DNA of 64,000 nucleotides, from assembly GCF_963853765.1 (NCBI RefSeq), contig NC_088860.1:6262001-6326000 (forward strand), written 5' to 3'. Below are positions 791-35,187 of the stretch, in pieces. The translations under genes were made by a program, and so were the position numbers. The notes below the pieces were generated by a model that was not told the origin of the DNA, ran no database searches, and saw only the letters and a list, made by a program, of their open reading frames with translations. Within the stretch, counting starts at the first letter, position 1. Every line of letters starts with the position of its first letter. Source of the stretch: Magallana gigas. Taxonomy: Eukaryota.

Positions 791-842
791 TATAAACCTG
801 CTTTGATTTCGATCCAACATGTTCTTTAGATATATCAAAGCA
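791..842 (+). promoter_or_regulatory. TATA box and probable non-coding exon 1 of Gly/Tyr-rich gene 1
   Basis: TATAAA at 791-796, followed by ...TCAAAGCA|GTTAAAT. Resembles TATAAAA (6221) ...TCAAAGCAG|GTATAG upstream of paralog 2. Confidence 0.5.
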
Positions 843-1436
843 GTTAAATTTGGATTAGATGGTTTTTAAACTTATTTTTCAACTTTAAAAGCTTAAAGAA
901 ATGTTCTCAACTTCATTTTCACTATATTTTTCTTAGAAAAAAAAAAAAAACCAAACATGCTTCTTAACATTTATTTCATTTATCAATTTTTCAAAGCCAT
1001 TTTCACAATGTTTTTAAACATTGATATACTTGATATACATATATCGACATGCATTTAATTTTCAGATCTTGGTTTCTTAACATGATCAATTATTTTTTAT
1101 ATTCAACCTGTTTATGTTATGTGCGTTTTGGGTTTTTTTCACCATCTTCATTATTAACATTTTAAAAGAATTCCAGTGATGAAGAAAAGGTTTACACGTC
1201 TGTTTAGTCCTTACCATTTAATATTCTTAAATGATATTAGATTTGACATTATAACTGAAAACCAACTTATACACAATGTAACTTTATTCAAATTTTTTTA
1301 GATAGTTTTAAAAATAAAATGCAGTAATTAGATCAAACCAAGAATTATTGTTTCTTTAAAAATATTGTTCAAACATCACATTAAGTGCTTGACAATGGTT
1401 AAAAATGTAGATATGTTTCTATCATTTAGGACCAAA

Positions 1437-2228
1437 ATGATTTCCCGCTTACTCTTTGCCATCCTCCTTGGGCTGACCTGTGCCACCTATCCAACTTACA
1501 CCACAGGTGGATCATATCTTCCTTATACAGCAGGTAGAATCCAGGGTCTAGGATTTCAAACCCTTCCTTATTCCACCGCTAAAATAGGAAATTTTGGCCT
1601 ACAAACCTATTTTCCCAGCACGTACAACACATTTGGCAATGGATACTACCCATCATCATCCTACCTATTCAACGCTGCTTCCTATCCAACTGTGGTCAGC
1701 CATTATCTGTACTTCCCCGGTGGAAACCCATGGGAACCTGGTAGGAACTTTATTGATCTGAGAGTAAACCCCTATCCCTGGTACTTGGGATATTATGGAG
1801 GACTTGGTGACGCTGGGTTTGGAAGCACCACTCTTCCAGGAAGTTATGGAACGTTTGGAGGTTCTTTGGGCTACCCCGCTGGTTTTGGTGGATTTCTCTC
1901 TAACGGATTAACTGATATTCCAACCGTTGGGTTTCCAACTGGTTCCAATTTTGGTCTTGATCCGTCTTTCTCAACTCTTACTGGCAGTCTCGGGTTTGGA
2001 ATTGGTGGAAATATAGGAGGAAACATCCATAGAAGTAAGCGATGTGATTCTCAGGTCACTTTATTGTTAAACAATGATAGTAGTTTAAAAAAAGTGTTAT
2101 TTTTTTAAAAAACGTCGTCAATATATCTTTCTAGACATTCAGATTTGATGCATTTTTCATTATTTTGTTTTATAATAATTTCAACAAGAATAACAAATTT
2201 GTCGTATCTTTCAGAGAAAGTATACTAA
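1437..2228 (+). CDS. Secreted Gly/Tyr/Phe/Pro-rich shematrin-like protein, copy 1 (203 aa). Coding exons 1437-2034 and 2215-2228
   Basis: Acceptor TTTAG at 1429, ATG at 1437, signal peptide MISRLLFAILLGLTCA. Donor A|GTAAGC at 2035 and acceptor TTTCAG at 2214 give a C-terminus HRKKVY*. AATAAA at 2285. Combined length 612 nt is in frame. Confidence 0.85.
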
Positions 2229-2731
2229 AGAAAAATGAAAGACTGGAGCATTGGAATGTTCTTATATTTTTGTACAATATGTAGAATAAACTAGTGTCAA
2301 TGTGTCTTGTTCTTCTTTATTATCTGTTTAATGCAATATTTACCTCTCAGAAAATATCAACCTTACTATACATGTATATATAGATAATATTAGAATTAGT
2401 AAAAGAAAATTATTATCATTTCGTTTTGCTACTCCTTTTGCAAAGTACTGTCTCAAAAACACAGTTTGTCACTTAAAAACGGTTCATATTAGTTGATAAA
2501 ATTAATTATACTGCATCGAGTGTAAAGTGACTTATTAAAATATACAGAGCAGTACTGTCTACAAAATATAAGGTTCGATATAAAACGTTTAAGTTATATC
2601 ATAATGTTCAAAAAACTTTCATAGCGTAAGATCCTTCAAAACAGAAACAGACTTTAATAATTGCAAAAAAACCCAAAACAAAACAAAAAACAAACAAACA
2701 AACAAATGTTCATTCCTTATTGAGCAATCAA

Positions 2732-2928
2732 TACTGTACATAGGGTTATTTTTGAACTAAGTGTTATTTTCGCCCTTTTTCACTTGAAAACTGTTTCGTC
2801 CAGGCAAAGTTGTGTTTGAAGAAAGATAAATTGAGTCATTGGAATTGCCCAGTCGTAAATTTTCTCACTGACAACAAGGGCGAGAGGGGCAAAATTATTA
2901 GGGGGCAAATATTTCGCTGTCGACAGTA
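2732..2928. mobile_element. TACTGTA...CAGTA-ended MITE; related copies at ~23897-24116 and ~30770-30980
   Basis: TACTGTA(T/C)A..GGGTTATTTT / AAAATAACCCTGTATACAGTA-type termini and a shared core (CCCTCGTTGTCAG, GGGCGAA) in three places. Confidence 0.65.
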
Positions 2929-6277: not shown

Positions 6278-8189
6278 GTATAGTAATTCTTTTTAACTGA
6301 AATTATATTGTAGATATTTTTTAATCTAAAATCATGCAATTTATTTTATTACAGTATAAACTTAGAGTTTTAATTCAATAACCAAAGCTTAAGGTACTTA
6401 ATGAAATGTAATGAATATATCAAAATACTATGTTTTGTGGTCATTGATTGCATTCTGATAAATTACTCGTAAATAGTTTTACACCGAACATCAAAAAAAT
6501 GCTGATGTCTCTGAAAACTCTAAAGTAAAGAATATTTGAAGTCTTAAAGAATAGTTAAAAAAAGTGTTAAAATTCCATTATCGGTAATTCTATTATACGG
6601 ATTTGTTTATTCGTACCATATTCCGCCAAATTCTAATAATCTTTTACTGTTAATGGGCCGGCAATGAATAAAGACAGTCACTTTTACCAGATTTCGTTAA
6701 TGATGTACATTTCTAGACTATGTAATATAATATGATAATATGATAAAATGAATATAACATAATTGTATGATATCAAGTCATAAAATACATTTATACATTA
6801 TTACGATAGAATTATCTTTAAATACATGTCCATTGATACATATATATATATATATATATACAATTTACATTCTTTCCAAAATCAGCAAGCTCTTACCAAA
6901 AGTCGGGTTCCAAACACTGGTCAATTATCTTCTACGTTTGATGTAAATTCATCTGAATATTAAAGATATAACTGAATACTTGTTCGTTACATATATTTCC
7001 TATTCACGATATAAAACATTTCCTTAGAAACATTTCTTACTATATATTAGGCTGCATTTACTATTTTTGTCCTACAGAATTATCTACGTCTGACATAATG
7101 AAGAATGCACTTTTACTTATCAGATTTTTCTACATCTGATAATTACAATATTTACAAAATAATTCCTTTTTAATTCTTAATCCTGATAGGTTTTTTTTAA
7201 ATTAATCTCATCTTCTAAAATGTTGGTAAATGGCTCAAATAGAAACTTACATTGTCTGGATGTCTTTAAGTCTTCAGAATAGATCATGAAAATATCAGCT
7301 TCTCTCTTGGAAATCAAAAAGTGATCTATTTGAACACTGTTCACAAGACACTGAAAACTCCTGACCAATAAAACCAGAGAAGTTTTAAAATCAACCAATG
7401 AATGTAAAATGTTTGAATGTGTGTGTGGATTTCAAACTGTGTGTGGAAAGCTCTCACTTAATACTTGTTAGTAGCAGGAAGAATTCGAACTAAAATATAT
7501 TTTATTTTTATTTATTACTTATTAATTAAAACACATCTACAACCACAATGTTTGGCTTCTGGTTCCACGAAGATCTAAATCATAAAGGTAAAGGCAGTCA
7601 CCGATGTACCAGTGCAGTATTTTTTTTTAATTTGATCTCAAACTTGTACATCTATTTCATTATATCAATACTGGGCAAATTTGTAATTATTTTTAAAAAT
7701 ACATGCATATCATCAATATTCTTCTTTTAATTTTATTTCACATATAGAGTTTAAAATAAAGTGAATAACATTTTATTTATGAAAAATACTTTGACGCTGA
7801 GGGTAAAAAACCACAAAAATAACAAATACACTAAAACTTCGTTGAAACTCATTTTTAGTTAAATTTAGGCTATATTTTCCCTCTCAAGTACATAGCACGA
7901 CAAATCTAAGCACATGTTTCAAATCAACATCAAATTTTTAACATCAGCACGTTTCAATGTTCATAATTCAATTTATACAGATTCATTTTCAAGCATTTAG
8001 TGTATCATTTTTTTTTTGTCAGAGAATAGTAATTAACTGTAACTGTAATAAAAAATTGATAGTAATAATGATGATAGATCTGAAATACTATACATTTTTC
8101 TATAACAGAAACTTTCTTTTCTAGCATAAGTGAATGTATGTGAAGCATCACCTGAAAAAGTAAATATTTCTTTTACTTTAAGGAACAAA

Positions 8190-9004
8190 ATGATTTCCCT
8201 CTTACACTTTGCTACCCTCCTTGGGCTGACCTGTGCCACCTATCCAACTTACACCACAGGTGGATCATATCTTCCTTATACAGCAGGTAGAATCCAGGGT
8301 TTAGGATTCCAAACCCTCCCTTATTCTACTGGTGGGATAGGAAATGTGGGACTTCAAACCTACTTTCCAAGCACGTACAACACATTTGGCAATGGATATT
8401 ACCCATCATCAACCTACCTATTCAACACTGCTTCCTATCCAACTGTGGTCAGCCATTATTTGTACTTTCCCGCTGGAAATCCATGGCAACCAGGTAGGAA
8501 CTTCATTGATCTGAGAGTAAACCCCTATCCTTGGTACTTGGGATATTATGGAGGACTTGGAACTGGATTTGGAAGCACCACTTTCCCAGGAACATATGAA
8601 ACATCTGGAAGTTCTTTAGGCTATCCCACTGGCGGATTTCTCAATAATGGATTAACGGGATTTCCCACCGCTGGGTTTCCAACTGGTTACAACTTCGGAC
8701 TTAATCCTTCATACACCACATTCACAGGAAATCTCGGATTCGGAAACTACGGATATCCCGGAACAGGAGTTGGGGGGTATTATCCAACCGGAAATCTAGG
8801 AGGACAAATCCACAGAAGTAAGTGACTATTTTTCTAAAAACTGTTGATCATTTTATAAGTTAAGAAAAAATGTAAACTTTTTCTTCAGACAGAAGCTTCC
8901 TTTTTAGATAATTAACATCAAGATATATAAATACAGAAGGGTTTTATTTGAATGAATAAAATTAATCAACAAATGTCTTATTTCTTTTAGAAAAAATATA
9001 TTGA
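8190..9004 (+). CDS. Secreted Gly/Tyr-rich shematrin-like protein, copy 2 (213 aa). Coding exons 8190-8817 and 8991-9004
   Basis: Acceptor at 8182, ATG at 8190, signal peptide MISLLHFATLLGLTCA. Donor A|GTAAGT at 8818 and acceptor TTCTTTTAG at 8990 give HRKKIY*. AATAAA at 9066. The N-terminal half aligns closely with copy 1. Confidence 0.85.
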
Positions 9005-11400
9005 GGAAGACCGAAACCGATGGAAGACGCTGTGAAGTTTTGTTATACTTTTATACGACGTGTAGAATAAATTAGTTCAAAGGTGTTGTCTTAGTTGTAT
9101 CAATATACCCATACCCGTCGGAAAATATACATTTGGGGGAAAACACACATTGGGCTTCGTGCATTGATCCAGCTATTACTTTAAGCTACATTTTAGTTGG
9201 TATTTTGTTTTCTTTACAGTTTTAACTTCAGTGTGTTGTTAAAAATGTATAAAAATGATATCTTTTACCACTTGAACAAAAACACAAGTACACATTGATG
9301 TATTTTAAGTGGATGTACCAGTAGCAACTGATATAATACTAACTTTGCTTCATCTTATATGTGGTTTTGACCTTACATAGTAATGCAAGAGTTCAAGACT
9401 TATTCTTGCTACATTACTTGGTATAAGTATAGATATAAACATTGATAACCGTTTTACAGATACTCTTTACAGTTACGTCACCAGGAGCAGCTTGTTTTAA
9501 GACTGCGAACAATCCTTAGGCCATGTATTTAATCAACCTGAAAAAAAATTTAAGGTGGAAGGCTACATCGTCACAACATGTCTGACATCCATTTGCAACG
9601 CTATTTTCTTCCGAAATTATAACAATATGTCGGGGTACAAAATAGTTATACACCATTTAAATGAAGTCCTCTAACGAGGGAGATGAAATAGGAAAGAAAT
9701 CACCAAAACGCTTAGAAAATAAGTCAATTTTCTGAGAGGTTAAAGCTTTCAACTTACATTGATAATCAGCTGTTTTGTACGGGAAAACGTAAAATCTAAA
9801 TGATATACTGTTTCCCTGCTATTGGAAATACATTTTTGTCACGTCATCAGCAACAGACGATCATACGTATATAACGGATTATCGATAAAGGTAAGCAGAT
9901 AATATTTTCACTTAAACTATGTATGTAGGATGAATATTAAACTGAAGTACCGTAGTACGATCTCTTAAATTGATCTTAACTTCCCCAATGTAAAACGTTT
10001 GCGGTAAAAGACTTGCATTGAAAGTTTAACATTAAAGTAATGTATTTTAATCAAAATAGATATAGCTAGGTAGCGAAAACAGTAAGAAGCCCGAATTTGC
10101 AAACCAAATGATGAACCGACAAAATTCTGAAAAGGAGCATGTTTTTCACTACCACATATACATGTGTATCACTATGGACATCTAATGTATGTATCACAGT
10201 TGTTGTTTATAATTGCTATTGTATATTTAAAAAAAAAGTAAAAGGCAATTTAACTACTAACACATTGTTTTAAAGAATTAGATATATATAATGCATTCAT
10301 CAAAAATGTAATTTTTGAGATTCCAAACATTATCATAAGCACTACTTACCTTATATTTACATATTTAGCATAGACTTGTTCCTTTTTCTTTTTGATTTTT
10401 ATTAAAAAAAAAATCGGTGCCAAGATATTTGAGAAAATGTAAAATGAAAAAAGACAACTCCGAAACAGGATCTTTCATACCAAATCTTTCATATCAAGAT
10501 TTTGCAATAATTCAGTTTTTCTCTTTTTCATCTCATTAACCAACGAATATTTTATATACTTTTAGATTTTTGTGGGATTTCAGCAGTTTGCCTTGAAAGA
10601 TTTTTTTTGTATTTTAGTTTCATATTTAGATATAGTAATGTTGTTTATTTATTTATTTCTCATTTCTAAAATCTACAACATGCCACTTTCATAAGAATTT
10701 TAAATCAGAAATGTTTAAAAGTTTGACAAATAAGGGGTTATCTGGAACCAGACTGATATTTTAAAAATCCTCTTCTATATTGTACTTTGATATCTATTAT
10801 TGTTGAATACTGTACCTATAATTAGTAACAAATGCATGCAAAAAATTCTCCTACACTTATTTAATGTAGATATCCACCTTTACCGTACTTTGCAATTTAA
10901 ATACCATGCATGTCCCAATGTACTTAATCATGCATTGTTGATTCAGCATCATGCTATGTTCCGATTAGATTCTAATGCGGACGTGTAAAAAACCATAATG
11001 AGTTTTGTATTTTTTATACAGCCAAAATCTTGCACGCAGCAAATGCAATGTATAGTAAACTTAAATAAAATCGACCATGATATTTATTTTTGTTTATCTA
11101 TAAATATCGATAAACAATTTTTTTTTATAATAATGCATTTTAAATGTTTAAATTTTATAAGTTCAGCGAATGTGTATTATGTTCTGGAAATAAACATTTT
11201 CATATTTAAACAAAAAGATATCGCTTCAATCAGTCAATGACAGAGAGTAAATCAAGTTTGTAAACAATTTGAATAATTTAGTTTAAGGTAAACACAATGA
11301 TTAAATCGTTCGTTATAAAAGCAATCCCTGGATTTTCTACCAACTTATGCACGAAACTATAAAAAGCATCCAATGTTTAAAGCTTGAACTCTTTTTAAAT

Positions 11401-14400
11401 ATGGTTCTTAGTCAGTCTACTATTTATAAAGGAAAGCGCTTATTTCTTTTCCTATTAAGTTTAGTTACTTTCCCCAAACCCTGCATTTTATTACAAGAGG
11501 ATGGATACTTCTTACAGCTGAGTCGACTTCGCCTAAGAAGCCCTCATCAGCTGTCGTTTTCCTTGTTCAAGGAGACCCAGTGCTGTTTGAGATGCCTTCA
11601 ATACACAGGTTGCAAAAGTGTAAACTTTGACATGCGGGATGGAAGGTGTGAAATAAACTTTTTCGGACCCCAAAGTCACGGGGTCAAAACGGAAGTTAAT
11701 CAAACATGGGTTTTATATTACAAACCCAATGGTAAGCAGCGTGTTATTTTTAACGTGGTTTTAGTTTTTTCTTTAATTGTAATGCTAAAATGACCCTCAA
11801 TTTTGATTTATAATTTTTATATTTAATGTCCCGGAAATTTTGGTGTAAATTGAGACGTCACCTTCAGGAAATATTATGAAAAAATATGAAAAATATAGCT
11901 TTAAATAAACGAGCTACGCAATTAGTTATTTTAATAGGTGTCATCTGTCATCTAAAAATTATATATGTTAGGTGGCGCCGGAGTATTGCAAGCTAATGAT
12001 TGACAAATATCTTTTTAAGGGTTGATCCAAAAGTAATGTCATACAATGATTCGTACTACATATGGTATTTCAAAAAAATGATTATCAAAATTTGAAGAAT
12101 CACATTATAGTTATCTAGTTTTATTATTTAAGTTTGTTTAGAAGTAAAAGTGATATAAATGCCCTAAAAATATATTAGTAAATCAACGTTTTGTTTGAGG
12201 TTTTATTGCAAATTACACCTTTAAATTTTGATGAAACCTCATACAATAGGGACTTTGAAATTAAAATTATATATGTTAGATGGCGCCGGAGTATTACAAA
12301 CCAATGATTGACAAATATTTGTTAAGGGTTGATCCTAAAGTAATGCCAAACAATGATTCGTACTACATATGGTATAAAAATGATTATCAAAATTTGACTA
12401 ATCACATCATAGTTATCTAGTTATCTAGTTTTATTATTTAAGTTTGTAGTAATAAAAGTGTTATATATGTCCTAAACTTTATAAACATGTTATATTGACG
12501 TGATATATTAGTAAATCAACGTTTTGTTTGTGGTTTTATTTTAAATTACACCTTTAAATTTTGATAAAACTTCATACCTAGGGAGTTTGATAACAAATAT
12601 AGCAAGTACGCTATTAATTTTCATAACAGTAGTTGTTTATAATGGTTACTACACGGTGATTTTCATATCATATGTCAAAGAACAAAAAAGGCCAGAGATG
12701 CAAAAGAGATGCAATACATGTTTTTCTTGTTAAAATCGTTAGAAAATGTATTGGAAATTGATGTCTGGAAAAAAAAACTTCCGGCAGATGGCGATGATAC
12801 TTCTATTGAGGTAATTTATGTTATGCATTAAAATGTTCCGATCTGAATTAAAATAGGTAATTTTTTGCACATAACGAGTTGTTGTTGCTTTACGCCGATT
12901 TTGCATGATTTTGCGCATTCGTTACATTGAGTTTTTAACAAAGACATATTGATTTAAATACAAAACATTAATGATAAATGCCCTTTTTTTTTTATCTAGT
13001 ATGATGATTAAGTAGATGTTAATACTGGCTATACGTATGGCCTTACCAATTTCAGTTGAGCGTAAACGAGGGTTGATCCGAAAGTAGTGTCACATATGCA
13101 AATAAGTCTGTTATATCACCACAGATTTGTTCTTGAATGATACTTTATCAAACTTTTGTAAAAATTCATGGTCAGGGTTTGGTAAAGTTGAAACCAAATG
13201 ATTCATTTTGGGTGCAATTAAAGGTTTTAGTACAACTATTCTTATAATTTAGTTAATTTCCTTAAGTTTTATTGTCTCATTGTTTGTATAATGTCCAATA
13301 TTTTACTTTTGTTATTAAGTTATGACATTTACATTAATACAAAAATTCAGTTCCTAATAAATCAAAAATTGTATTATCCCTGGTCAGTTTCCATTTCGAG
13401 TGAGTAAAAACATCTTTTAATGTTTGGAGCTTTTCATTTTAATTTGTCTTATTTTTTCTGATATAAAAATGTAAAACTAGACATCAGTTGATGACATATA
13501 ATTATGTTTAATGTTATCTTATTAAAATAATTTTAAAAATAGAATAACAATTTTGATTTTGCCAATATTTTCATCCTTTTTTAAAATCACAACGCCCAAG
13601 AATCTTTTTGTGACATTACTTTTTGACCAACTCCTCTTGTGTGCTAATTTGATGAAAAAATTTGTAGAAGAATGTTATTTTTCTCTTGATTTAAGATAAA
13701 AGGGAAACAAAAAAAGCACACACAACAACTTTTACACATAATGCCACATATGATAAATTTGTTAATTTCTTTAGCCGAGGATAGGGAGCTAATGCTTCGC
13801 GCAACTGCCGGAAATGGAATCAGCGTCAGAGACACATGGTTAGGAACAACCAAACCACCTCCTGCCGAAGACGCGTGTATCTCTATGGCAACTGGGGCTT
13901 GCTCTACACACTATCGGAATCCAAATGTCGATCTTTGGAACACTCTTCCTATAGTTCAGGTTATTGATTTGATTTAAAACGTTACTTTAAAATTTGACTA
14001 AAAGGCCTAAAGTTCAAGCGGGTTTTCTTCAAAGAATTTAGTGGCTAAAACTTGTAGAATGTTGACAAGAAGAACATTTTTGTATATTTGAATCACGCTC
14101 GATTGGCGGAGGGGGTTCCAATAATTCACAATATGAAGCATTGCCAGCCATTTAACTCAGTGTTAACTGAAATGTCTGGACAGGTGAATAACTGACAGAG
14201 ATACAACATTCAGTCACCTGTCAGTTAATTTTCTGCTACATTATAATTACCTTTAAGTTGAATAAAATATTTTTATTAAGTTCATCTTCTTAAGAAATGA
14301 ATCGGAAGCAATGACTTATGAAATTAACATGAAGGCAAAAAAGCAAAAAGGTATAGAGAATGTTTTTATTCATATCATAACTCCTGAAATGTAGAAAAGC

Positions 14401-17947: not shown

Positions 17948-18072
17948 GTGAGTAGATGTGCGTTTTATTCTAGATTTGTGTCTTTTCATTGAATGCTGCC
18001 AACAGCTTGTTTTATTTTATCTTTTATTTTAATTTCTAGATTTGTGAAATCGAGTATTAAAGTTTCTTCAAA

Positions 18073-18627: not shown

Positions 18628-19269
18628 ATTTTTTAAAAATGATTTGAATAAACGTTTAAAAACTAATTTAGTTTTAGTGTTTCTGCATTTTAATTGACAT
18701 ACTCTAATATGGTGTTTTTGCCAAAAAAAATTATCATAATTTTGAAAATAATGAGCCAATGTTTTATTTAAAGATTTGCGCAAATTCAAATATTCACATT
18801 TATTCTTAAGCAACGGATCCACTACAAATGTTTGACGGAAAATTGGAACATTAACAGAAGTTCCAAGACATACTAAAACAACGTTTTACCTTTCAATAAA
18901 TAAGAAGTAATAAACTGAAACACAACATCCCCTTTAACTTTTTTTTGTTAAGAAAAATAAACAGGTTGAATAAAACACTAATATAAATAATAAGTTTCAA
19001 ATTAATATTAAACCTTAAAATACAGAGGATTCCTTATCAATTGCGAGGAATAAATATCCGCGTAAAATCCCAAAAAGCGGCCCTCGAGTACTTTAAAATT
19101 GCGCTTGTATTTTTAAGACAGAAAATATTAACGAAAAGATTGATGCTCGTGATTATGTGTCCGCGATTTGATTCAATAAGCGGAATTGTGGAATTTAAAA
19201 CTCGAGTAAAATGATGAATTTACAGGAAATGATAGGCATGGTGACCCTTTGTACGAAGTTTTTTTCTAT

Positions 19270-19760: not shown

Positions 19761-20631
19761 ATGGCATAACTATAGGCGTTTGAAGGGGTAAAAAAAAACG
19801 GTAATGCCTTAACTTTCTATGAAAATACACATTTATTGATGACGTAGAGACTTGCGCGCTATCTAGCGTCAATCCAGTGAATAATTGTTGGTTTTACATC
19901 GGTGTCTGTTGATTATGCAGACGAGTCTGTTAATTTTGTTTTAAGCTTGTCTGTTTCGTATTTCAATATGTTTTTAAAAATTAGTTGTCCCTTTCGCATT
20001 AACTTTTTTTTAACCCATTCCGCTGCTCATACATATAACTATCTTGTCTGTAAACATATTTATCTTGTATTTCGTTATATTTAGTAGAAAAACAACTTTC
20101 GTCCAAAGTGCAGAAGTATGCCAACTCCCAAAAAACAATAAAGCACAAGTAATGCACGTTTTTAAGCTTTACGTAAGAATAATGGGGTTAATTATTTGTC
20201 AACTGATGAACACATGCGGGATTGTTTGACCTCACATAATCCTTATCTTTGAATATCCAACTGTAATATATATTTATTTAAATGCCGAATTGCCGTCATG
20301 TATTGAACGTTTTTTAGGTTTACTTACAATTTATGAGGAGGTTAGATCAAATATTTGACGACTATTGTAAGGCTGCGCATATTTTTTACCTTCCGTGTTC
20401 CTTGTGTCATTAAAATGTGTCACTAAAATGCGAATGCAACTCGCAACGGTACCATATAAATCAATTCTGAAACGTGCGTATCTCCAGTGTCCATCATTCT
20501 CTAAGCGGTGAGTAGATGTGCGTTTTAATCTAGACTTGGGTCTTTCTCATTGATTGCTGCCAACAGCTTGTTTCATTCCATATTTATATTTGATATTTAG
20601 ATCTGTAAAATTGGATATAAAAACTATCAGA

Positions 20632-21655
20632 ATGAGTTGCCTACTTTCCGTTAGTCTACTTTTTGGAATTGTTTGTGCCATCTTTCCTGGTTTTTGCTAC
20701 GGTGGTCACGTGCGGTCCATTTATCCAACATACGGAATCAGTAATACGTATAACAGGCTGTTTGATGGTGGGTCTCTCTTTGGTGGATTGACCAGTGGAA
20801 GCGTAGGTTTAATTGGCAATAAATATGAACGTTATCCTTTTAGAGGCCATCCTACGGGAAACGTCGGAGGTGGTCTTTTAGGAGGACCCCATGGACGTAA
20901 GTATACAGGCAACCTTAAAGTAGATCCAGTTTTCTGTGATGTCATACTGTATTGTAAAACTTTGAATTCTTTAAAATTTGTGCAAGATAGTTTTATTAAT
21001 TTTATGTGAATATAATCACATGGATGTAATTAGAATACTGTCAAGTTCAAGATATATTTGCAGCTTAATTCTATCCTAAATTTACAATTTTTTATACATT
21101 TCATCTATGCTAAGGGGAAATAACTCTTTTTCTGACTTTTCTCTCAGTTGTATGTCTAAATGCTATAATTTTTCTAATCCCAACAACCAATTTTAAAATG
21201 TTTTTGTAGTTTTAGTTTTCTAACACAGTTAACAATAAAATTAGAAAAGATAAACAAGTTTCTGCCTACAAAGATTTTACTTTTTAACAAAAAAGTACGG
21301 TTTTCTGATCCTAAAATACGCTTTAGGTCATGTTTATCTGACATCTCAAGAAGTGTGATTTCATGTATATTTTTTCTAATAATTGATGAAATTTAAGTTT
21401 ATTTAGTTGTAATCAGTTATGATTTTCAACTTTCATCAGAGAATTGTACGAGTATGGAGTTACCTTAATATTATATTTTATATTAATCATAATTTGGATA
21501 GAAAGGATTGGTCTAGGGTATATATAAACTTGCAATTGCTTATTTTTCATGCTGACTACTTTAGTTTATTAATTATAATATATGCCTACTATATTGTACT
21601 AAATTTGTACTAAAACTTTTTTTCCTTTTTTTTTTTAGATTATTGGAGGGCATGA
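20632..21655 (+). CDS. Shortened Gly-rich paralog, copy 4 (93 aa). Coding exons 20632-20896 and 21639-21655
   Basis: Own TATA/exon 1 (20455-20507), acceptor at 20600, signal peptide MSCLLSVSLLFGIVCA. IYPTYGISNTYNRLF is identical to copy 3. Donor C|GTAAGT at 20897 and acceptor at 21638 give GHYWRA*. Confidence 0.7.
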
Positions 21656-23182
21656 ATCGTTTCTACGAATGATTTGTATAAAAACGTTTAAAAATAAATC
21701 TAGTCTTAATATTTTCTGCATCGTAATTGGTATACTCTACTTCAATGTTTTCAACAATACGATTTATGATGGTTTTAAAGCTGCTTGGTCCGATTTTTTC
21801 GTTATTACAGTATTTAAAAAAAATTTCTATACAAACCATTCATTTTAGAAAGTTATGCACTTTCTCCTATTTACACCAGCAGAATCAGTCTCCTTTCAAA
21901 GTTAGAAATATTCAAAGTAAATAAAAATCATTTCTTTTTGGGCAAACGAAAAAACAAACCAAAATGCATCACGGGAATGTTTAGAAAAGGAAACCGTTTG
22001 GTTTCGTCCCCCGAATAATTGGGTTATTCAACCCGCATGCTATTCATCGATTGTAAAGAAAGCAAACTTCAGATATATTTGCGAACAAAACGTTCTCGTG
22101 TTTATTTGTAATTTGTCTGATCATTTCGACCTTTATTGAAAGCGATTTCAAAGTCGTAATACAACCATAGACGTCTCGTCGTCAGGGACGAACTTTAACA
22201 TGAGGCGAAATAACGAGGTACCCTTTTATGTCGTTTGTTTTGTTAGCAAATGTACGTATTTTTCTTCTTTGAAATTTGGCTTAAATGACTAGGAAAACTA
22301 CTGCAATGCCTATTATTATACATATACTTAGCATAACCATCGTTTAAAAGCGTGCATAAAATTTAATATAAAATCGGACCAAGCAGCTTTAAATGTATGG
22401 AGCCATATTTCTATCGAACGAGTGGTACAAATTCAAATCTTACGCAAAACAGCCTCCACAAACATTTGCATTTACAATATGTTTGGTCATGTCCTCGCGT
22501 GGTAGTGTGTGAAATTATTTCCTGATGTTTTTGCTTGTATATCAAATACGTATAGGCAGTAGAACGTTTCGTCATCCAAACAAAGTGTGCACATTTTTAA
22601 AAGAAGGACTTTTAAGACAATAGTTTGCAGTCGTGTATGCATCATGGTATTCTATTTAAAAGGTAAAGCTTATCTTAGTATATCTTGGAAATTGGTTCAA
22701 GTTCTAATACTTGCGTCAAACTAAATTACCAGTACGACACTTCTGATTAGATTTTCTAAAGCTTCTTTTCATTTTTTTTTTTATTTCATTGGTTGGTAAA
22801 TTGAAACACCACTACGCCTTTATTTCTTTATTTCCTTTTTCTACCGTTAAAACAATAAACGGGTTTTACAAAACATTAACACAAATAATAAATTCCAAAT
22901 GAAGATGCAATCCTTAAAATTATTAATAGGCACCTCCCAACAAGCAAATCAAACATAAACAGGGTCAGACATCGACACCATGGTACCGGTTTTGCAACAT
23001 TAATTATCAATAATAACTAGGCTATATAAATTCAGATGGTGGATCCTTTACCTTTTGCCGTTAAATAGTGCATGTTTTTAAGTTGTTCGGACGAATAATG
23101 AGGAAGTTAAATAAAGCATTTAACAACTAATATACAACTTCACGTTTTGTTTAACCTCCAGTGAACCTAATGTCACCTAACA

Positions 23183-23670
23183 GCAAATGCAACTCGTATT
23201 GGTGCCCTATAAATTGAATCTGACGCGCTTATATCATCATTTTCTTAAAATTCAGTAAGTGTGTGTCTAATTAAAGATTGTTGTCTTTCACGATGCTTGA
23301 ACTGCTAACGAATTGTATTAGGCCTTTTTCAATTTATAGATCTATAATTGTAGATAAGGTACTTGTTCAGTATAAAGGTCTTTCCTTATGTCTCCTCCAT
23401 GGCCATGCTTAAGGTACATTTCATGGTCCATTCAAACTAGCTGAGTACTTTATTGATTTTGGAAGAACTGGGCCCTACTATCTTGATTTCAGATAATACA
23501 TCATCTATCCAACATACGGAATCAGTGATTCGTATAACAGGCTGTTTGGTGCAGGGCCTCTCTTAGTGGATTGACTACTGGATGCCAAGAGTTAATTAGG
23601 GGCAATAACTATGGAAATTATCCTTTTAAAGACTATCCAACAGAAAATATCAGAGGTGTTCTTTTTGGGG
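23183..23670 (+). pseudogene. Pseudogene of the copy 3/4 family
   Basis: Promoter remnant (AATGCAACT, TATAAA at 23208), a degraded signal-peptide stretch with no ATG (~23380-23410), then GRTGPYYLDFR* with an in-frame TAA at ~23493, followed by IYPTYGISDSYNRLFG and further disruption. Confidence 0.8.
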
Positions 23671-24460
23671 AGGGGGGGGGGGGGGGGCTTTTGAATGATT
23701 CCCTGTGGAGGCAGAATTGTTATCATAATGATTCATAAATTTATCAATCGGTATGTATATAAATGAATAAATAATACATGTAGACTTGTTTTTATTGATT
23801 ATTACATCTTTGATTTAAATTATTTGAAGGGTAGGATTAAATGCGTATGCTGATGAACTTTTAAACTTGACACTGTTTATTCGTATTGATGGTGATTACT
23901 GTATACAAGGCAATCTTTGTCCCTGTTTTATATTCGTCCATTCCCCCTCGTTGTCAGCGGCCGAATTTAGGACTGAGAGAATTCTAAATATCTGGCGAAT
24001 ATAACCTTCTCTACATTATCTTATTGGTGTTTTTTTTTTAATTTAATGATACATGCCTACTGAAAAGTAATGGAATACTTTAATTTTATTTGTTTGACAA
24101 ACTAGTATACACAGTACCTATGAGTGTAAAATGAAAACATTCATGCAAATTTTATTTCATTTTTATCAAAATCACATAATAGAGGATAAAGAGTCGATAT
24201 AAATAAAAGAGCTCGTTACGAGTATATTTGTTTCTTGATAAATATTTCTTTCCCAATACACTGTATATAAATGTTAATTTTTATATAGTGTTGATTCATG
24301 TTTTTAAAATGTCAAGAGTGCGTCAAATTTTATGGTTATGATTAATAGCATATTCATTGTTGAGTATGTTAGTTTGGATTCAGTTTATCTTGTTAAACTT
24401 CAGATGTAAGTCAGAATGGTATCCTTCCTCGGCTTGTGGACGGCGACCAATCAAAACATT

Positions 24461-25982
24461 TTAACCGGGAAAACCTGGTAAAAATGAAAAGAAAGGAACT
24501 TAGAAAGATGGTTCCATTAAACAAAAAATGATTTATGTTAATTTGATATATGACATACCCATGTTAAATATACCTGTGTTTTGACTCTCTGGCATTAACG
24601 TTGATCCTCCGAATAACCCAGGGTTTGGTGATACAAGAGGTGATAGAACGTCTACGCCATTGTTGATGGCCGGGTTACTGCTGCCCCCTGTTGAACCAAA
24701 CCCGTGTAGGAGAGCAGATGTTATATCATCAATTGCGGCTCTCAAATTGCCTGTCCTAATGTTATTGTTCACGGTAGAACCAGGAAAATTGTCAGTAAAG
24801 TGTCTGTCTGAAACAAAAGTTTCTCCAAGCCCGAAATTGTGACTGTTGACACGGTTCTCAGGTGCGAAAGAAGATCCGAGGATACCTGAACTAGGGGAAT
24901 TTCCAGTGAAACGATTGTTTAAGGTAAATCCCAAAGGTGGTGCCATGTGGCTAGTTTCATGGAATGAGTTTAAAAAACCAGAAGGGGCAATCGGATTGTT
25001 TCCAAAACTGCCTGTCCGTGTCAGTTCACGGATTTCTGTTCCACCAAAACTAGTGCTGAAAATTTACATAGAGATATAAAATTAGTTGAAAGCAATTTGA
25101 TCTGTATTTTTTCTCTGCAGAATTTAACAAGTGCTTTTTAATAATTTATGGATGCAATTGTATCATTTATGATTCAATTTAATTAGAAGAAAGATCTATA
25201 TATACAACGGAATACGGAGTAGCAAACAATTTTTGTACGAGATAAGAATTTATAAAGTTAAATATAACTTTACTTAAATCAGAGCCTTGTAAAATTACCT
25301 TTTTCCAAATCTTCAGTGAACTTAAACCATGATTTTTTTTTCGTTGAAATATTCACAATTTGCAATAAAAATGTGCGACATACTAAATTGAAAATAAAAT
25401 ATGTATTGCTTCAATAATAAAAATTGAACTCTCACTTTAATCAAAATGTTAATGTTTTTAAATGAAACATACAGTTTTAAAATTCTCTGTTTCATAAATT
25501 TATTTTGAATCATTATATTCACCAAACTGTTTCCTATAACCTTACACAAATGGAGCAAACTTTTTATTAAAAACATTTAAATATGCACCTATTTTTTTTA
25601 CCTAAAAGATCCTATGCACCTATTTTTTTTACCTAAAAGATCCACCACCGAAATTGTTTGTATCAGCGAGTGGCATTCTAGCCACTTGATTAGAAATTCC
25701 TTGAGAGTAAGGAAAGAAGCTATCGTAGAAGGACCCAGGCTGGGCAACAGCATACGAGTTGTGGTTTATCCCTGGAGATGAAAAATCAGTAAGAGATCCA
25801 ACACTTAATGAAAATCCATTGAAGGACGTTTCTGGAGAGTATCCGAATCCCACATCACTACTGTGGGTTCCGAGTTGTTCCGAAAATTGGCCAGAAATGG
25901 TGTTGGTATGCTCTCCTAGCAAAGCATTGCATGAACAAAGAACGCACAGCAAGAAAACCAGAGTACCTCCCAAACAACTCAT
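24461..25982 (-). CDS. Secreted Ser/Gly/Asn/Phe-rich low-complexity protein (286 aa). Exons 25982-25633, 25055-24559, 24474-24461
   Basis: TATAAA at 26027-26022, signal peptide MSCLGGTLVFLLCVLCSCNA. GT-AG junctions link the two ORF-track ORFs in frame (861 nt), ending ...NMGFPG*. The last exon is the least certain part. Confidence 0.75.
25582..25643. repeat. Perfect 31-bp tandem duplication that duplicates the exon 1 splice donor
   Basis: TATGCACCTATTTTTTTTACCTAAAAGATCC x2. Minus-strand donors at 25632 and 25601. Confidence 0.9.
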
Positions 25983-26978
25983 CCTGTTTTGGTAGAAATC
26001 TTACACACGGCGTTTACTCAATTTATACCGAATGCAGTGTGGTTAGGTTATTATCTATCTGTCTATAGATATAGATAGTCGGCTATTTTTTTAATGTCCC
26101 ATGTTCTTTTTTTATACATATTGTAATTAGCTCTTTTGTAAGTAATTAAGAATAAGAGCAGGATAGGTTTTGGTTAATGTGATCAAGAGAACTGGTTTTT
26201 GCCGGGGGTTTCTTTGGATAATTTTCTTCTATCAGGAAAAAAAATACAAGTCGTTTGGCTGATGTTTTGGGTGTTTTTGTACTTGCGTTTTCGTGTTAAT
26301 TAACAAATTTAATGGTTGCGTTATTAATCACTGGTCATAATGAGAATTTAACATCTAAAAACTGAGTATAGCTCGAGCTTGAAAGAGTTTTTATGGTTGT
26401 TTTTTGGGGTTTTTTTGGGTTTTTTTTTTGTTTTTGTTTTTTTTTTTATTTGTATTTTGGCATTTAAGATTATTGGATTTCAAAATGTTAATCTGTTATA
26501 AGTTGTATAGTGCACCTATCTAGAGTGGTATTTTAGGCAGTCCATACATACCCCCTTCATACCCCACACCCTAAAAAGTTCAGACCTTTAGATTTTTTTA
26601 TTATGATTACCAAAGATAAGCCTTGGACTCAACACTGCTACCCGCTACAAACAAAAAACTCCTTCAAAGGGATTCCTGGATATTCGCATGACTAGAAGCT
26701 AATTAACTTGTTTGTAATTATTGCTTGAACGTACAATTGGCAAAGAAATATTTTAAAGTACTTGAATTCAATTGTTATTATTTCCTGAATGTAAATTATG
26801 GGTGCGTTTTAATATGAATAAAATTATTGAAAAATGTATTTTGTTTTAGCTATCCAAAATCTAAAAGATTATACAAACGAGCTTTACTTTACACGATTAT
26901 GAATGTGTGCTTATAAAAACTTTATTGTTAATTACATATATGGCCTTTCGATCGCCTACAAAATCTGTCTGCCATTAA

Positions 26979-32500: not shown

Positions 32501-33160
32501 CTTTTTGAGAAACGGGCCCAGCTGGTGTGGAAGCATTTTCAGGTAGTGTAGATTAAAAATTGTGAAAATCGGGGCTAGGGTGGGGCCACGATGGCGGGGG
32601 GGGGGGGGGGGGGTCGAATTCTTTCATAGGAATTTACCACAGTATATCTTTAAAAATCTTCTTCTCAAAAAAACAATCAGCCAGGAAAGCTGTAACTTGT
32701 GCGGAGAAGCATCCTAATGTATGGTAGATTCAAGTCACCCGGGGTAGGGTGGGGCCACAACCGGGGGGCACTTTTTTACGTTAGAATATTTAGAGATAAA
32801 TCTTCGTATAAAAACAATTTCCCTAAAAAAGCTGTAACTGTAGAGAAAGCAACATCAGGAAATGTAGATCTAAATTTGTCAAAATCAAAATCTTGGGGAG
32901 TTGGGTTTGGGTACATTGAGGATCTAATTTAAAAAGGAAAACATTTTAACTGTTCACAAAAACTTAAATGTTATAATATATGGTTTTATTATATTGCTAT
33001 ATTGCTGATTCTTTTAAATTGTTTAGACTTTGGCCCTTGGATTATTCTTGGGCCTCACAACGGGTTCAGAGTTTGATGTTGGTTTATATCCCATCTATAA
33101 ACAATTATTTAGGATCTTTTTGAGAACTGCAGTGCTCAACATGTGATATGACTACAAAAT
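29533..33160 (+). mobile_element. Helentron/HINE-like element with Cg170-like satellite monomers, split by a nested insertion
   Basis: 5' GAGCTCAAAACTCAAGTGAGCTTTTCTGATC plus a GTCY tract. ~165-bp monomers (AAAATCTTCTTCTC...GGAAAGCT...GTGGAAGCAT...GTAGATT...GGGTGGGGCCAC) lie on both sides of the 29766-32519 insertion. The family name is from recall and the 3' end is approximate. Confidence 0.65.
29766..32519. mobile_element. Non-autonomous PIF/Harbinger-like element with long imperfect TIRs
   Basis: GGGCCCGTTTCTCAAAAAGGC / GCCTTTTTGAGAAACGGGCCC termini plus further inverted matches over ~180 bp. Host sequence resumes on both sides. No transposase ORF seen; TSD unclear (CTG/CAG-like). Confidence 0.7.
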
Positions 33161-33459
33161 CAACCTGATAGAAAAAGGGCTTGGTTATAAACACAAGATT
33201 ATCCAGGAGGAAATGGAGTTTTCTTTATACAGGATAAACATGTTTTATTCTACATTGTCCTGATATTTTGTATTATGTATATGCTTGGAAAATATGAACA
33301 ATATCTCTATAAAAGCACCTCATTGTGATATTTTATAACAACTTTCACGTACATGAATCTTGGAGACATAAAACATGTTTACTTTAAAATTTATTTCAGT
33401 GGAAATCATATAAATATCAATAAATAAATCTGTGAGTCCTGTGTAAACTTGTTGATTAT

Positions 33460-34174
33460 TTAGTAGACGTTCTTCTTTCCTGAAAAGAGGATAGGAACAG
33501 TTAAGATTTATCACGACAAATCAAAAAAGACAAATTTTGGCAGTTGATAGGGCTTATACAGAAAAAAACGTCGTAAAACTTTTTAAATTTTGGGTTTTTT
33601 TTACCATAAATAAGTTACATGAAGTACCTTTGTAGTTTGGTCTGTAACTGGGGTAACCACGGAATCCCCCTCGGATACCGCTAGCATAGATAGAACCGCC
33701 ACGTGGCCCCACGGCTCCTCCTCTAAATCCAGAATATCCATAGTTAGGTCCATATCCGCCATATCTAGCATATCCTCCAATTCCACCGCCGTATCCTCCG
33801 CCAAGCCCTCTACCATATCCTCCGTATCCGCCGCCATATCCGGGAGTGTATCCACCGCCATATCCTCCAATGTTACCTCCCATTGGATATCCAGCACTTC
33901 CGTATCCATATCTTACACCGCCAATTCCTCCACGGCCGGAGTAAGGGTTGTAGTACGCACCGCCGATTGCTCCTCTTCCGTATCCGGGACTTCCGTATCC
34001 GTATCCTCCGATGACCCCACTTCCGCCGTAAGGTCCCTGGATTCCGATGTATCCTCCTCTGTAGTAGTCATCATCGTCCCAATCGTTGTAGCCGCCCCAT
34101 CCGCCGCCGTAATACCCGGGGGTCGCTACTGCTACACCCAACAAGCAGCAAAGGAATATGATGGAGGAAGACAT
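33460..34174 (-). CDS. Secreted Gly/Tyr/Arg-rich shematrin-like protein with an acidic DWDDDDYY patch (188 aa). Coding exons 34174-33628 and 33479-33460
   Basis: Acceptor at 34189, signal peptide MSSSIIFLCCLLGVAVA, and GGY/GYG repeats. A phase-1 intron leads to the tail GKKNVY*. AATAAA at 33395-33390. Confidence 0.88.
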
Positions 34175-35128
34175 TGTGTTCTGCAGTTCTGAAAGATAAT
34201 TAACCTCGTTGTTATCATGCATATTATAAGTGATTCTTTCCAGTCGAGGTATTAAAATCTACCATCAGATGTATACTAAATTTGTCACACTTATCTCTAT
34301 TTATTTATCTTTTTTGGTATTTATTCATATTTATATCTATTTGATTCAAATATTCATATCTATTCATCATTTAGTTAATCTATTTATATATTTACATGTA
34401 TTTATTTATTTATCTATTTGTAACACTATTTCTTTATAATTACTTTTTTAATCAAAGGAATGAAATGTATAACGGCAAATGTTTATCTGGTTATTAACAT
34501 CGTGTTAATTGTCTTCACGAAGTGTTAATGGCCAAAACCCTGACCAATATATGCTCGGAAATACCGAATGCACAATCATAATCCATTACCAGCGACTAAA
34601 AAACGACAATTATTGCATGTCGGAATGTTAATTACACGGCCACAATTAATGCACGACACTGTCCGAACATGACCTTCTTTGTTGTGGTACATGTTTACCA
34701 TTGTTTGTACTTATCTAGTATCAAAGATACTAATTTATGATTACGGAAGATATTGAAATAAGATTTTTACCTAATACTGGTTTGATGATTTGTTTTTTTT
34801 TTCCATTTTGACAAGTATGCAAGTTATAAACTGCGTATACATCTTCTATACGGTAATTCCATAGCCGATTTATAATTTATGAATGACTTTTTAAAGAAAT
34901 ATAATATTTCTTAGAATAAAAAAGAAACAAACTCTTTCAGTGTATAAACATCAAAAAGTAAAACAAGGTTTTTTCCCTCAAAAGTCGATGGTTTATTTGT
35001 TCAATGGAATTTTGATTATCACCATAAATAGATATTGGGAAAATTAAATACGGTCTTATCGAAAATATATTTATACTAGAGTTGGTTTCCTATAGAATTT
35101 CCAATAGAACTGAGTTGTTGGTACGTAC

Positions 35129-35187
35129 CTTTCTTTCCAAGTTCTTTGGCCGTCTGCATAAAGTCCCGGTTTTGGCGCGCTTATATA
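35129..35187 (-). promoter_or_regulatory. TATA box and non-coding exon 1 of the 33460-34174 gene
   Basis: TATATAA at 35187-35181 and donor GAAAG|GTACGT at 35128. Confidence 0.6.

What the first reader, a model, noticed from the sequence alone, without database searches (positions are those of the whole stretch)
791..35187. Uncharacterised tandem cluster of secreted Gly/Tyr-rich (shell-matrix-like) genes with one shared architecture
Seen: five intact signal-peptide genes rich in G/Y/P (1437, 8190, 18073, 20632 on +; 34174 on -), one pseudogene (~23183), and a Ser/Gly/Asn-rich secreted gene (25982, -), all within 35 kb. Each Gly/Tyr gene has TATA, a non-coding exon, one large exon and a tiny tail exon. 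Established: shematrins of pearl oysters are Gly/Tyr-rich secreted shell proteins with a basic RKKKY-type tail. Inference: this is a lineage-specific, co-regulated biomineralisation locus evolving by duplication. Low-complexity genes like these are often mis-annotated.
Basis: partly seen in the sequence, partly recalled or inferred. Interest (0 to 1): 0.72.

Follow-up and report, generated by a model that had tools for sequence, protein, structure and literature searches.

The report
Oyster shematrin-like secreted gene cluster
A roughly 73-kb stretch of the Pacific oyster genome holds about ten tandemly duplicated genes for small, secreted, basic, glycine/tyrosine-rich disordered proteins built on one gene plan; they are probably shell or periostracum framework proteins, are already annotated in RefSeq (partly misnamed), and have never been studied functionally.

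Summary
The window is Magallana (Crassostrea) gigas chromosome DNA (G000:C8:6262001-6326000). ORFs with signal peptides start exactly at 1437, 8190, 18073 and 20632 (+) and at 34174 (-). A dead copy lies at about 23180-23700, and a 281-aa acidic Ser/Gly/Asn-rich secreted gene starts at 25982 (-).

Genes A and C are letter-for-letter RefSeq proteins, and B is 96% identical to "shematrin-like protein 1". So the genes are annotated, though functionally uncharacterised.

The main exon ends at a phase-1 GTAAGT donor. A micro-exon of 4-6 codons follows, giving the tails KKVY, KKIY, GKKNVY and HKRHG.

The cluster continues 38 kb upstream of the window, with three Gly/Leu-rich genes (tail KKKVY) and an inverted copy of D. 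Earlier scan notes (s1-361700, s1-361728, s1-361782) had already seen those parts.

A, B and C share a non-repetitive core of about 35 residues. An exhaustive profile search finds that core only in true oysters (Ostreidae), not in pearl oyster shematrins.

RNA contigs show that C is transcribed and spliced. D is barely covered and the pseudogene is silent.

Mantle-specific expression and presence in the shell were not testable here. The assembly gap lies in an intron of an unrelated PAN/Apple-like gene.

Verdict: a new member of a known kind, of moderate interest.

The parts
654..713 (+). Gene A: candidate TATA (654) and short 5' non-coding exon ending at a GTAAGT donor (714).
   Evidence: Sequence signals only. 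Not verified by RNA.
1430..2034 (+). Gene A main exon (CDS 1437-2034): 16-aa signal peptide, Gly/Tyr/Thr/Pro-rich body, conserved core. Phase-1 donor GT at 2035.
   Evidence: Identical to RefSeq XP_019927159.3 (P0019).
2215..2290 (+). Gene A tail micro-exon: completes K, then K-V-Y-stop (stop 2226-2228). AATAAA at 2285.
   Evidence: P0019 ends HRKKVY.
8183..8817 (+). Gene B main exon (CDS 8190-8817). Phase-1 donor at 8818.
   Evidence: 96% identical to 'shematrin-like protein 1' P0002.
8991..9071 (+). Gene B tail micro-exon: K-K-I-Y-stop (stop 9002-9004). AATAAA at 9066.
   Evidence: The orthologue P0002 ends HRKKIY.
11347..17114 (+). Unrelated PAN/Apple-like gene embedded in the cluster. Its intron holds the assembly gap 15726-15876.
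   Evidence: tblastn of RefSeq P0024 places exons at 11632-11742, 13774-13962, 15470-15646 and 16821-17036. The C. angulata orthologue has a faint PAN_1 hit.
17895..17947 (+). Gene C TATA (17895) and 5' non-coding exon ending at 17947 (donor GTGAGT).
   Evidence: 84% identical to the same block of gene D. An RNA contig overhang AAGC before 18039 fits the exon1/exon2 join.
18040..18451 (+). Gene C main exon (CDS 18073-18451) with the conserved core. Phase-1 donor at 18452.
   Evidence: Identical to RefSeq XP_011442225.3 (P0046). RNA run X6 covers it at depth 70-150 against 2-5 in the flanks.
18611..18652 (+). Gene C tail micro-exon: H-K-R-H-G-stop (stop 18625-18627). AATAAA at 18647. If the intron is retained, the protein ends GRK.
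   Evidence: P0046 tail. 159-nt skip in an RNA contig. Another allele gives the tail HK.
20455..20896 (+). Gene D: TATA 20455, exon 1 to 20507, exon 2 from 20601, CDS 20632-20896. It is a C-type gene with an in-frame 47-codon deletion of the core. Candidate tail exon at 21639.
   Evidence: D-type ORFs are conserved in C. angulata and in other samples (P0018). RNA depth is only 1.6-4.6 and the contig is unspliced.
20835..22426 (.). High-copy repeat inserted downstream of D's main exon.
   Evidence: Depth in the thousands in all four runs, with many loose ends.
23180..23700 (+). Pseudogene of the C/D type: start ATG>ATA, deletions, TAA at 23494-23496, frameshift, poly-G insertion, donor lost.
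   Evidence: No coverage in the RNA runs X6 and X21.
24461..26026 (-). Gene F: TATA about 45 nt before the ATG at 25982. Coding exons 25982-25633, 25055-24574 and 24474-24461. 281 aa, Ser/Gly/Asn-rich, acidic (pI 5.0). Its last intron is also phase 1, before a 4-codon exon (GFPG).
   Evidence: A 281-aa gene sits in the syntenic place in C. angulata. Single copy. No sequence similarity to the Gly/Tyr genes.
33460..33479 (-). Gene E tail micro-exon: G-K-K-N-V-Y-stop. AATAAA about 84 nt further on.
   Evidence: Prediction from splice signals only.
33628..34188 (-). Gene E main exon (CDS 34174-33628): 17-aa signal peptide, then G 40% / Y 19% low-complexity body. Phase-1 donor.
   Evidence: 98% identical ORFs occur in other oyster samples. 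Single copy.
35129..35187 (-). Gene E TATATAA (35187-35181) and predicted 5' non-coding exon ending at 35129 (donor GTACGT).
   Evidence: Signals only.

Best explanation
This is part of a roughly 73-kb cluster on a Magallana gigas chromosome (G000:C8, about 6,224,000-6,297,200).

Gene order: U1, U2, U3 (+), D' (-), A, B (+), a PAN/Apple-like gene, C, D, pseudogene (+), F, E (-).

The Gly-rich genes fall into four subfamilies:
- U: G 44%, L 20%.
- A/B: G/Y/T/P-rich, with a conserved core.
- C/D.
- E: G 40%, Y 19%.

Their middles cannot be aligned with one another, but they share one chassis:
- a short 5' exon;
- one large exon that opens with a 16-17-residue signal peptide, cleaved before T-(Y/F)-P or T-P;
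- a phase-1 intron;
- a micro-exon of 4-6 codons that adds a basic C-terminus, usually ending in Tyr.

Shown: the genes, the splice plan of A, B and C, transcription of C, the duplications, and the restriction of the core to oysters.

Inferred: the mature proteins (7-23 kDa, pI 8.1-9.6, predicted disordered) are secreted by mantle epithelium. There they would be cross-linked through their many tyrosines (DOPA/quinone or dityrosine, by the oyster's tyrosinases or peroxidases) into an insoluble organic framework of the shell or periostracum, as proposed for pearl oyster shematrins. The basic tail would dock onto acidic matrix or mineral. The conserved core, FPxGNPxxPGxNxxDLxR..PY, would be a small structured interaction module.
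For: Genes and coordinates.

Identity with RefSeq models that carry the spliced tails.

Name 'shematrin-like protein 1' for the A/B type.

Common phase-1 donor, micro-exon and nearby poly(A) signal in 8 genes.

N-terminal 30 residues similar between subfamilies beyond composition: z = 3.6-5.7, while the signal peptide of F, used as a control, scores z <= 2.1. A against C over the full length gives z = 8.7.

Invariant core residues.

No Pfam or PDB relatives.

Basic pI, few acidic residues and high Tyr.

AlphaFold mean pLDDT is 42.6, with only the core near 70.

RNA contigs cover C at 70-150x, with the intron-length skip and + strand polarity.

Family found only in Crassostrea/Magallana, Ostrea and Saccostrea.

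Literature:
- Shematrins are Gly/Tyr-rich, with RKKKY-type ends, and are thought to act in prism formation (PMC3896809).
- They lie in tandem arrays in Pinctada (PMC4759782).
- Shematrin-like genes are among the most mantle-specific transcripts in Dreissena, are basic, and cannot be aligned with the Pinctada proteins (PMC9210306).
- 'Shematrin-like protein 1/2' appear in a C. hongkongensis mantle transcriptome (PMC13465682).
Against: No tissue-resolved expression and no shell peptide evidence was obtained. The tissues of the RNA runs are unknown.

The tails (KKVY, KKIY, KKKVY, GKKNVY, HKRHG) are not the canonical RKKKY, RRKKY or RRRKY.

A profile of A/B/C finds no Pinctada protein, and the literature states that shematrin homologues are absent from C. 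gigas (PMC4759782). The analogy may therefore be convergence.

Neither UniProt id (K1R514, K1RPI0) occurs in the one C. gigas shell-proteome supplement I could search.

Cross-linking and docking are pure inference.
Confidence: 0.6

Rival explanations
1. The proteins are structural but belong to another secreted material rather than the calcified shell matrix. Candidates are the hinge ligament, the larval or adult cement that glues the oyster to its substrate, and an egg coat. Tyrosine/DOPA chemistry would serve adhesion or tanning there. (Periostracum is already counted under the best explanation.)
For: Basic, Gly/Tyr-rich, disordered secreted proteins are equally typical of quinone-tanned and adhesive materials (own knowledge). 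Nearest Atlas feature clusters are arthropod cuticle-like and Prisilkin-39-like, but at chance-level scores. Tyrosinases are candidate settlement genes in C. gigas (PMC6337334). No shell-proteome match was found.
Against: No positive evidence for any of these tissues. The A/B type is named after shematrins and is listed among mantle transcripts in a sister species (PMC13465682). U, A and B give 0-2 tryptic peptides of usable size, so their absence from shell proteomes is uninformative.
Confidence: 0.25
2. The small members (C at 12 kDa; D and D' at 7.5 kDa) are cationic glycine-rich host-defence peptides rather than matrix proteins, and the cluster diversifies under pathogen pressure.
For: They are small, secreted, basic and Gly-rich. 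They show rapid duplication, copy-number differences between assemblies, and allelic tail variation.
Against: They share core, promoter and architecture with the larger structural-type members. There is no amphipathic or Cys-stabilised motif. No induction data exist.
Confidence: 0.07
3. The similarity is only low-complexity noise, and several of the 'genes' are not functional.
For: D has almost no RNA support. One copy is a pseudogene. The 5' exons are unverified.
Against: ORFs are conserved across species and individuals. RefSeq models exist. Splice phase and tails are conserved. The core has 18 invariant columns, including 12 core residues. Shuffle z-scores are significant. C is transcribed.
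Confidence: 0.03

Closest known systems
Shematrins 1-9 of pearl oysters (Pinctada; Yano et al. 2006, as cited in PMC3896809, PMC4759782, PMC5400390)
   Same: Secreted, basic, Gly/Tyr-rich repetitive low-complexity proteins. Short basic C-terminus ending in Tyr. Genes in tandem arrays. Rapid divergence of the repeats. NCBI names the oyster A/B genes after them.
   Different: No alignable similarity was found by an exhaustive profile search. The tails carry a V, I or NV between the basic run and the final Tyr. A, B and C hold a non-repetitive core of about 35 residues that was seen only in Ostreidae. The literature calls shematrins pearl-oyster-specific and absent from C. gigas. Whether Pinctada genes put the tail on a phase-1 micro-exon is unknown to me.
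KRMP (lysine-rich mantle proteins) of Pinctada
   Same: [quoted passage not shown] Similar in size to C and D.
   Different: There is no Lys/Trp-rich domain after the signal peptide in any cluster member.
Shematrin-like proteins of other bivalves (Dreissena polymorpha, Mytilus edulis, Chlamys farreri)
   Same: Same kind of protein. In Dreissena they are basic, built of G(n)Y arrays, are among the most mantle-specific transcripts, and cannot be aligned with Pinctada shematrins (PMC9210306). RnKmY tails occur in Mytilus isotigs (PMC3896809).
   Different: Different species and sequences. Homology was not tested, and the conserved oyster core has not been reported there.
Prisilkin-39 and Gly-rich cuticle or keratin-like proteins
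   Same: Composition-level likeness only (Atlas scores 0.77-0.81).
   Different: The scores are at chance level. There is no shared domain, and O. edulis 'keratin type I cytoskeletal 10-like' (P0013) is clearly a misnomer for a C-type protein.

Membership tests
Shematrin (Pinctada) | N-terminal signal peptide; secreted | tested here: met
   Hydrophobic N-termini of 16-17 residues ending in small residues before T-(Y/F)-P. Heuristic only; no SignalP run.
Shematrin (Pinctada) | Gly/Tyr-rich repetitive low-complexity domains (GnY followed by a hydrophobic residue) | tested here: inconclusive
   Clearly met by E (mature G 40%, Y 19%) and, as Gly/Leu repeats, by U1-3 (G 45%). A, B and C have only 19-24% Gly and contain a non-repetitive core.
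Shematrin (Pinctada) | C-terminal signature RKKKY / RRKKY / RRRKY / IRRKK / PRKKY (PMC3896809) | tested here: not met
   The tails are HRKKVY, HRKKIY, YKKKVY, KGKKNVY and GHKRHG. They are similar (a basic run, mostly a terminal Tyr) but none matches a listed signature.
Shematrin (Pinctada) | Basic isoelectric point | tested here: met
   Mature pI 8.1-9.6 for all Gly/Tyr members. F is acidic at 5.0.
Shematrin (Pinctada) | Detectable sequence homology to Pinctada shematrins | tested here: not met
   The A/B/C profile run against 1.84 billion representatives gave 7 hits: 6 oyster proteins and one spurious repeat. U and E were not searched this way. The E word search was swamped by low-complexity candidates.
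Shematrin (Pinctada) | Expression at the mantle edge and presence in the prismatic layer | not testable with these tools
   Tissues of the available runs are coded. The only hint is mantle DEGs in C. hongkongensis (PMC13465682).
Oyster core-motif family (A/B/C type; unnamed) | Conserved block S-x-x-x-x-F-P-x-G-N-P-x-x-P-G-x-N-x-x-D-L-x-R-x-x-P-Y | tested here: met
   Invariant F93 P94 G96 N97 P98 P101 G102 N104 D107 R109 P112 Y113 in 13 proteins from Magallana, Ostrea and Saccostrea. Present in A, B and C, partly in the pseudogene, deleted in D and D', absent in U, E and F.
KRMP | Lys/Trp-rich domain directly after the signal peptide | tested here: not met
   Mature N-termini are TYP(S/T)Y, TFPGSYY and TPGYY. 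There are only 3-14 K+R residues in total.

The most novel reading that the evidence does not exclude
The shared chassis is a 16-residue signal peptide cleaved before T-Y/F-P, one big exon, a phase-1 intron, and a basic micro-exon that usually ends in Tyr. On this reading it is an old bivalve gene plan. Oyster U, A/B, C/D and E genes, pearl oyster shematrins and KRMPs, and mussel or zebra-mussel 'shematrin-likes' would then be one superfamily whose middles have been rewritten beyond recognition. These textbook 'lineage-specific, de novo' shell genes would not be de novo, and C. gigas would not lack shematrin homologues as published.
Probability: 0.3. Interest if true: 0.6.

Novelty: new member of a known kind. 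Interest (0 to 1): 0.4.

Why it matters
Oyster shell proteomes were reported to lack silk-like framework proteins, and shematrin homologues were reported absent from C. gigas (PMC4759782).

This cluster shows that the oyster does carry a sizeable, fast-evolving battery of shematrin-like genes. Their products would escape standard proteomics almost entirely: U1-3, A and B yield 0-2 tryptic peptides of 7-30 residues.

The cluster offers three things:
- a clean case of how low-complexity structural genes diversify while keeping only their ends and splice plan;
- a conserved core motif that could be tested for binding to chitin, matrix or mineral;
- candidate markers for shell growth in an aquaculture species.

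It also flags concrete annotation errors.

Tried and rejected
1. Pfam on all seven products gave nothing above noise. The PDB profile search gave nothing.

2. The ESM Atlas feature search for A, E and U1 gave only chance-level, composition-driven hits.

3. The AlphaFold model of A was too poor (pLDDT 42.6) to justify a fold search.

4. The word-based homologue search for E was swamped by low-complexity candidates and returned only one genomic ORF.

5. I looked for spliced transcripts among Logan contigs (P0010, P0011, P0037 and others). All proved to be genomic read-throughs. Exact look-ups of the RefSeq products were blocked because the window's own genome is left out.

6. Paper searches for the LOC and UniProt ids found nothing. 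A search of the one shell-proteome supplement held as text also found nothing; a second paper had no supplement held.

7. No paper in the library describes the exon structure of shematrin genes.

8. The upstream regions of A and B, and the tail-exon DNA of different subfamilies, show no significant nucleotide similarity. Cross-subfamily homology therefore rests on architecture and the N-terminal module only.

9. The RNA joint in gene C was reported at 18460>18620 with non-canonical ends. I read it as the canonical 159-nt intron (18452-18610) placed 9 nt off, because the skip length is identical and RefSeq uses that intron. The contig letters were not visible, so a 159-nt allele deletion is not excluded.

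10. P0057, the only non-oyster profile hit, is a translated satellite and was rejected.

Full report
**Where we are.** The window is G000:C8:6262001-6326000 of a 564-Mb genome. Gene A's product is letter-for-letter RefSeq XP_019927159.3 of Magallana (Crassostrea) gigas. Gene C's product is XP_011442225.3. The gene between B and C matches XP_011442144.4. GC content is 27-38%. This is Pacific oyster chromosome DNA, and the genes are already in RefSeq.

**The assembly gap (tested first).** The only run of N is 15726-15876. It lies between two exons (15470-15646 and 16821-17036) of a PAN/Apple-like gene that happens to sit inside the cluster. The RefSeq protein P0024 aligns on both sides with overlapping residue ranges (91-149 and 144-215), so that model loses no coding sequence in the gap. 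No Gly/Tyr gene is near it. True continuity across the gap cannot be proven from the window. However, the sister species C. angulata has the same order, B-like / 303-aa Apple-like / C, on one contig. I did not fill or infer any letters.

**The observation.**
- A (1437) is 203 aa and B (8190) is 213 aa. They are 78% identical and have G 19%, Y 10-12%, T 10-14%, P 8%.
- C (18073) is 131 aa, with G 22%, Y 11%, P 11%.
- E (34174, minus strand) is 188 aa, with G 36% and Y 16% (model corrected).
- D (20632) has an open frame. It is a C-type gene with an in-frame deletion of 47 codons that removes the family's conserved core.
- The copy at about 23180-23700 is dead. Its start is ATG>ATA, part of the signal peptide and core is deleted, there is an in-frame TAA at 23494-23496, the frame changes between 23556 and 23592, a poly-G run is inserted, and the donor is lost.
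- F (25982, minus strand) has three coding exons and encodes 281 aa with S 15%, G 14%, N 10% and pI 5.0. A 281-aa gene lies in the same place in C. angulata.

**Gene plan.** In A, B, C, D and E the large exon ends at a phase-1 donor (GTAAG in A-D, GTACT in E). A good acceptor 70-550 nt further on opens an exon of only 4-6 codons, followed by AATAAA within 36-115 nt. The resulting C-termini are:
- A: HR-KKVY
- B: HR-KKIY
- C: G-HKRHG
- E: YK-GKKNVY

RefSeq proteins confirm the A and C tails exactly, and the B tail through its 96% identical orthologue. One RNA-seq contig of run X6 covers C's exon and skips 159 nt. That is the exact length of the predicted intron 18452-18610, although the tool places the joint 9 nt further on. 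I read this as the canonical intron and cannot exclude a deletion allele. Another allele gives C the tail HK. With a retained intron the protein ends GRK, as in K1R514. D's tail exon is uncertain. The homologous acceptor is at 21639 (tail HYWRA), beyond a high-copy repeat.

**The 5' non-coding exons** rest on signals.
- C and D share an 84% identical block running from the TATA through exon 1 into intron 1 (TATA 17895 and 20455; donors 17948 and 20508).
- A read overhang of AAGC before 18039 fits the C exon1/exon2 join.
- E has TATATAA at 35187 and a donor at 35128.
- For B I found no clear TATA.
- F has no 5' non-coding exon.

**Expression.** In RNA run X6, C's exons reach depth 70-150 against 2-5 in the flanks. 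In the stranded poly(A) run X21 the few reads have the polarity expected for a plus-strand transcript. D is covered at 1.6-4.6 by an unspliced contig. The pseudogene has no coverage in either RNA run.

**The cluster is larger than reported.** Upstream of the window lie three more genes with the same plan, at C8:6225145, 6231550 and 6252629. They encode 263-273 aa with G 44%, L 20% and the tail Y-KKKVY. An inverted copy of D lies at C8:6255553 on the minus strand; it is 97% identical in DNA over 1 kb and its ORF is intact. Nothing similar lies in the next 60 kb upstream or in window 36-64 kb. E, F, the U genes and the A/B genes have no other copies in the genome, apart from one weak low-complexity hit on another contig for U1, and within the limits of that search. 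A 178-aa A/B-type paralogue is annotated in an earlier C. gigas assembly and twice in C. angulata, but it is absent here. C. angulata carries two D-type ORFs after C that its annotation does not call. Copy number therefore varies.

**Are the subfamilies related?** A/B and C share a non-repetitive core with 12 invariant residues across 13 oyster proteins: F-P-x-G-N-P-x-x-P-G-x-N-x-x-D-x-R-x-x-P-Y. The shuffle z-score for A against C is 8.7. The middles of U and E cannot be aligned to them beyond composition (z = 0-4.7). The first 30 residues, however, are more alike than shuffles: A-U1 5.7, C-U1 4.5, C-E 4.2 and A-E 3.6. The signal peptide of F serves as a control and gives -0.8 to 2.1. Together with the identical splice phase and similar tail codons, this favours one ancestral gene for U, A/B, C/D and E. 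F shares only the phase-1 terminal micro-exon and is otherwise unrelated.

**Distribution and fold.** A profile of the A/B/C family, run against 1.84 billion representative proteins without a word filter, returned seven hits. Six are oyster proteins and one is a translated satellite. Named relatives come from Magallana gigas and M. angulata, Ostrea edulis (misnamed keratin-like) and Saccostrea. There is no Pfam or PDB match. AlphaFold predicts disorder (mean pLDDT 42.6), with three short strands and pLDDT near 70 only around the core.

**Comparison with what is known.** Shematrins are Gly/Tyr-rich secreted shell proteins with RKKKY-type ends (PMC3896809). They lie in tandem arrays in Pinctada (PMC4759782) and are described as restricted to pearl oysters and absent from C. 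gigas (PMC4759782, PMC5400390). Shematrin-like proteins of the zebra mussel are basic, among the most mantle-specific transcripts, and cannot be aligned with the Pinctada proteins (PMC9210306). The oyster cluster works like these: it is secreted, basic (pI 8.1-9.6), Tyr-rich, repetitive, tandemly duplicated, and carries a basic tail ending in Tyr. It fails two membership tests: the canonical tail signature and detectable homology. I therefore file it as shematrin-like, not as shematrin. The only functional hint is that 'shematrin-like protein 1/2' are among mantle transcripts in C. hongkongensis (PMC13465682).

**A practical point.** U1-3, A and B contain so few Lys/Arg residues that trypsin gives 0-2 peptides of 7-30 residues.

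**Annotation problems seen.**
- Gene A is currently named 'probable glycoprotein hormone G-protein coupled receptor'.
- An earlier model of A read through the intron (216 aa).
- UniProt K1RPI0 fuses B with the Apple-like gene.
- The O. edulis C-type protein is called keratin.

**Verdict.** The biomineralisation role is plausible (about 0.6) but unproven. It is a new member of a known kind. The shared chassis and the oyster-only core motif are its modestly novel features.

Noticed in passing
G000:C8:6225145-6255553 (window -36855 to -6447; loci L002-L005): Three further genes of the same plan (U1-U3: G 44%, L 20%, tail YKKKVY) and an inverted, 97% identical copy of gene D lie upstream of the window. 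U2's proximal upstream region and N-terminus resemble U3, while its distal upstream region and the rest of its coding sequence resemble U1. That fits a chimera formed by unequal crossing-over.
   Followed up: partly
window 20835-22426: A high-copy repeat, with depth in the thousands in all four runs and many loose ends, sits between gene D's main exon and its presumed tail exon.
   Followed up: no
window 23667-23690: A poly-G run inside the pseudogene attracts G-only read ends in the raw-read run. This looks like a sequencing artefact, not expression.
   Followed up: no
window 47574-48668 (-): An intron-less 364-aa ORF matches PF12260 (protein-kinase domain of FAM69/DIPK, E = 6.5e-06, just above the cut-off). 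This is a secretory-pathway kinase-like gene 12 kb from the cluster.
   Followed up: partly
window 1437-2228 (gene A) and 8190-17114: RefSeq names gene A 'probable glycoprotein hormone G-protein coupled receptor'. Its previous version read through the last intron. UniProt K1RPI0 fuses gene B with the neighbouring PAN/Apple-like gene.
   Followed up: yes
L007:12586-12819 and 15611-15874 (C. angulata): Two intact D-type ORFs lie downstream of the C orthologue and are not called as genes in that annotation. The B/Apple-like block also occurs at two places on the same C. angulata chromosome (41.39 and 46.56 Mb).
   Followed up: partly
window 25590-25655 (-): A tandem duplication of about 33 nt repeats the donor site of gene F's first exon. 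Use of the second copy would bring in a stop codon.
   Followed up: no
own genome, whole: The 178-aa 'shematrin-like protein 1' (XP_034330151.1) of an earlier C. gigas assembly has no locus in this assembly. This suggests presence/absence variation.
   Followed up: partly
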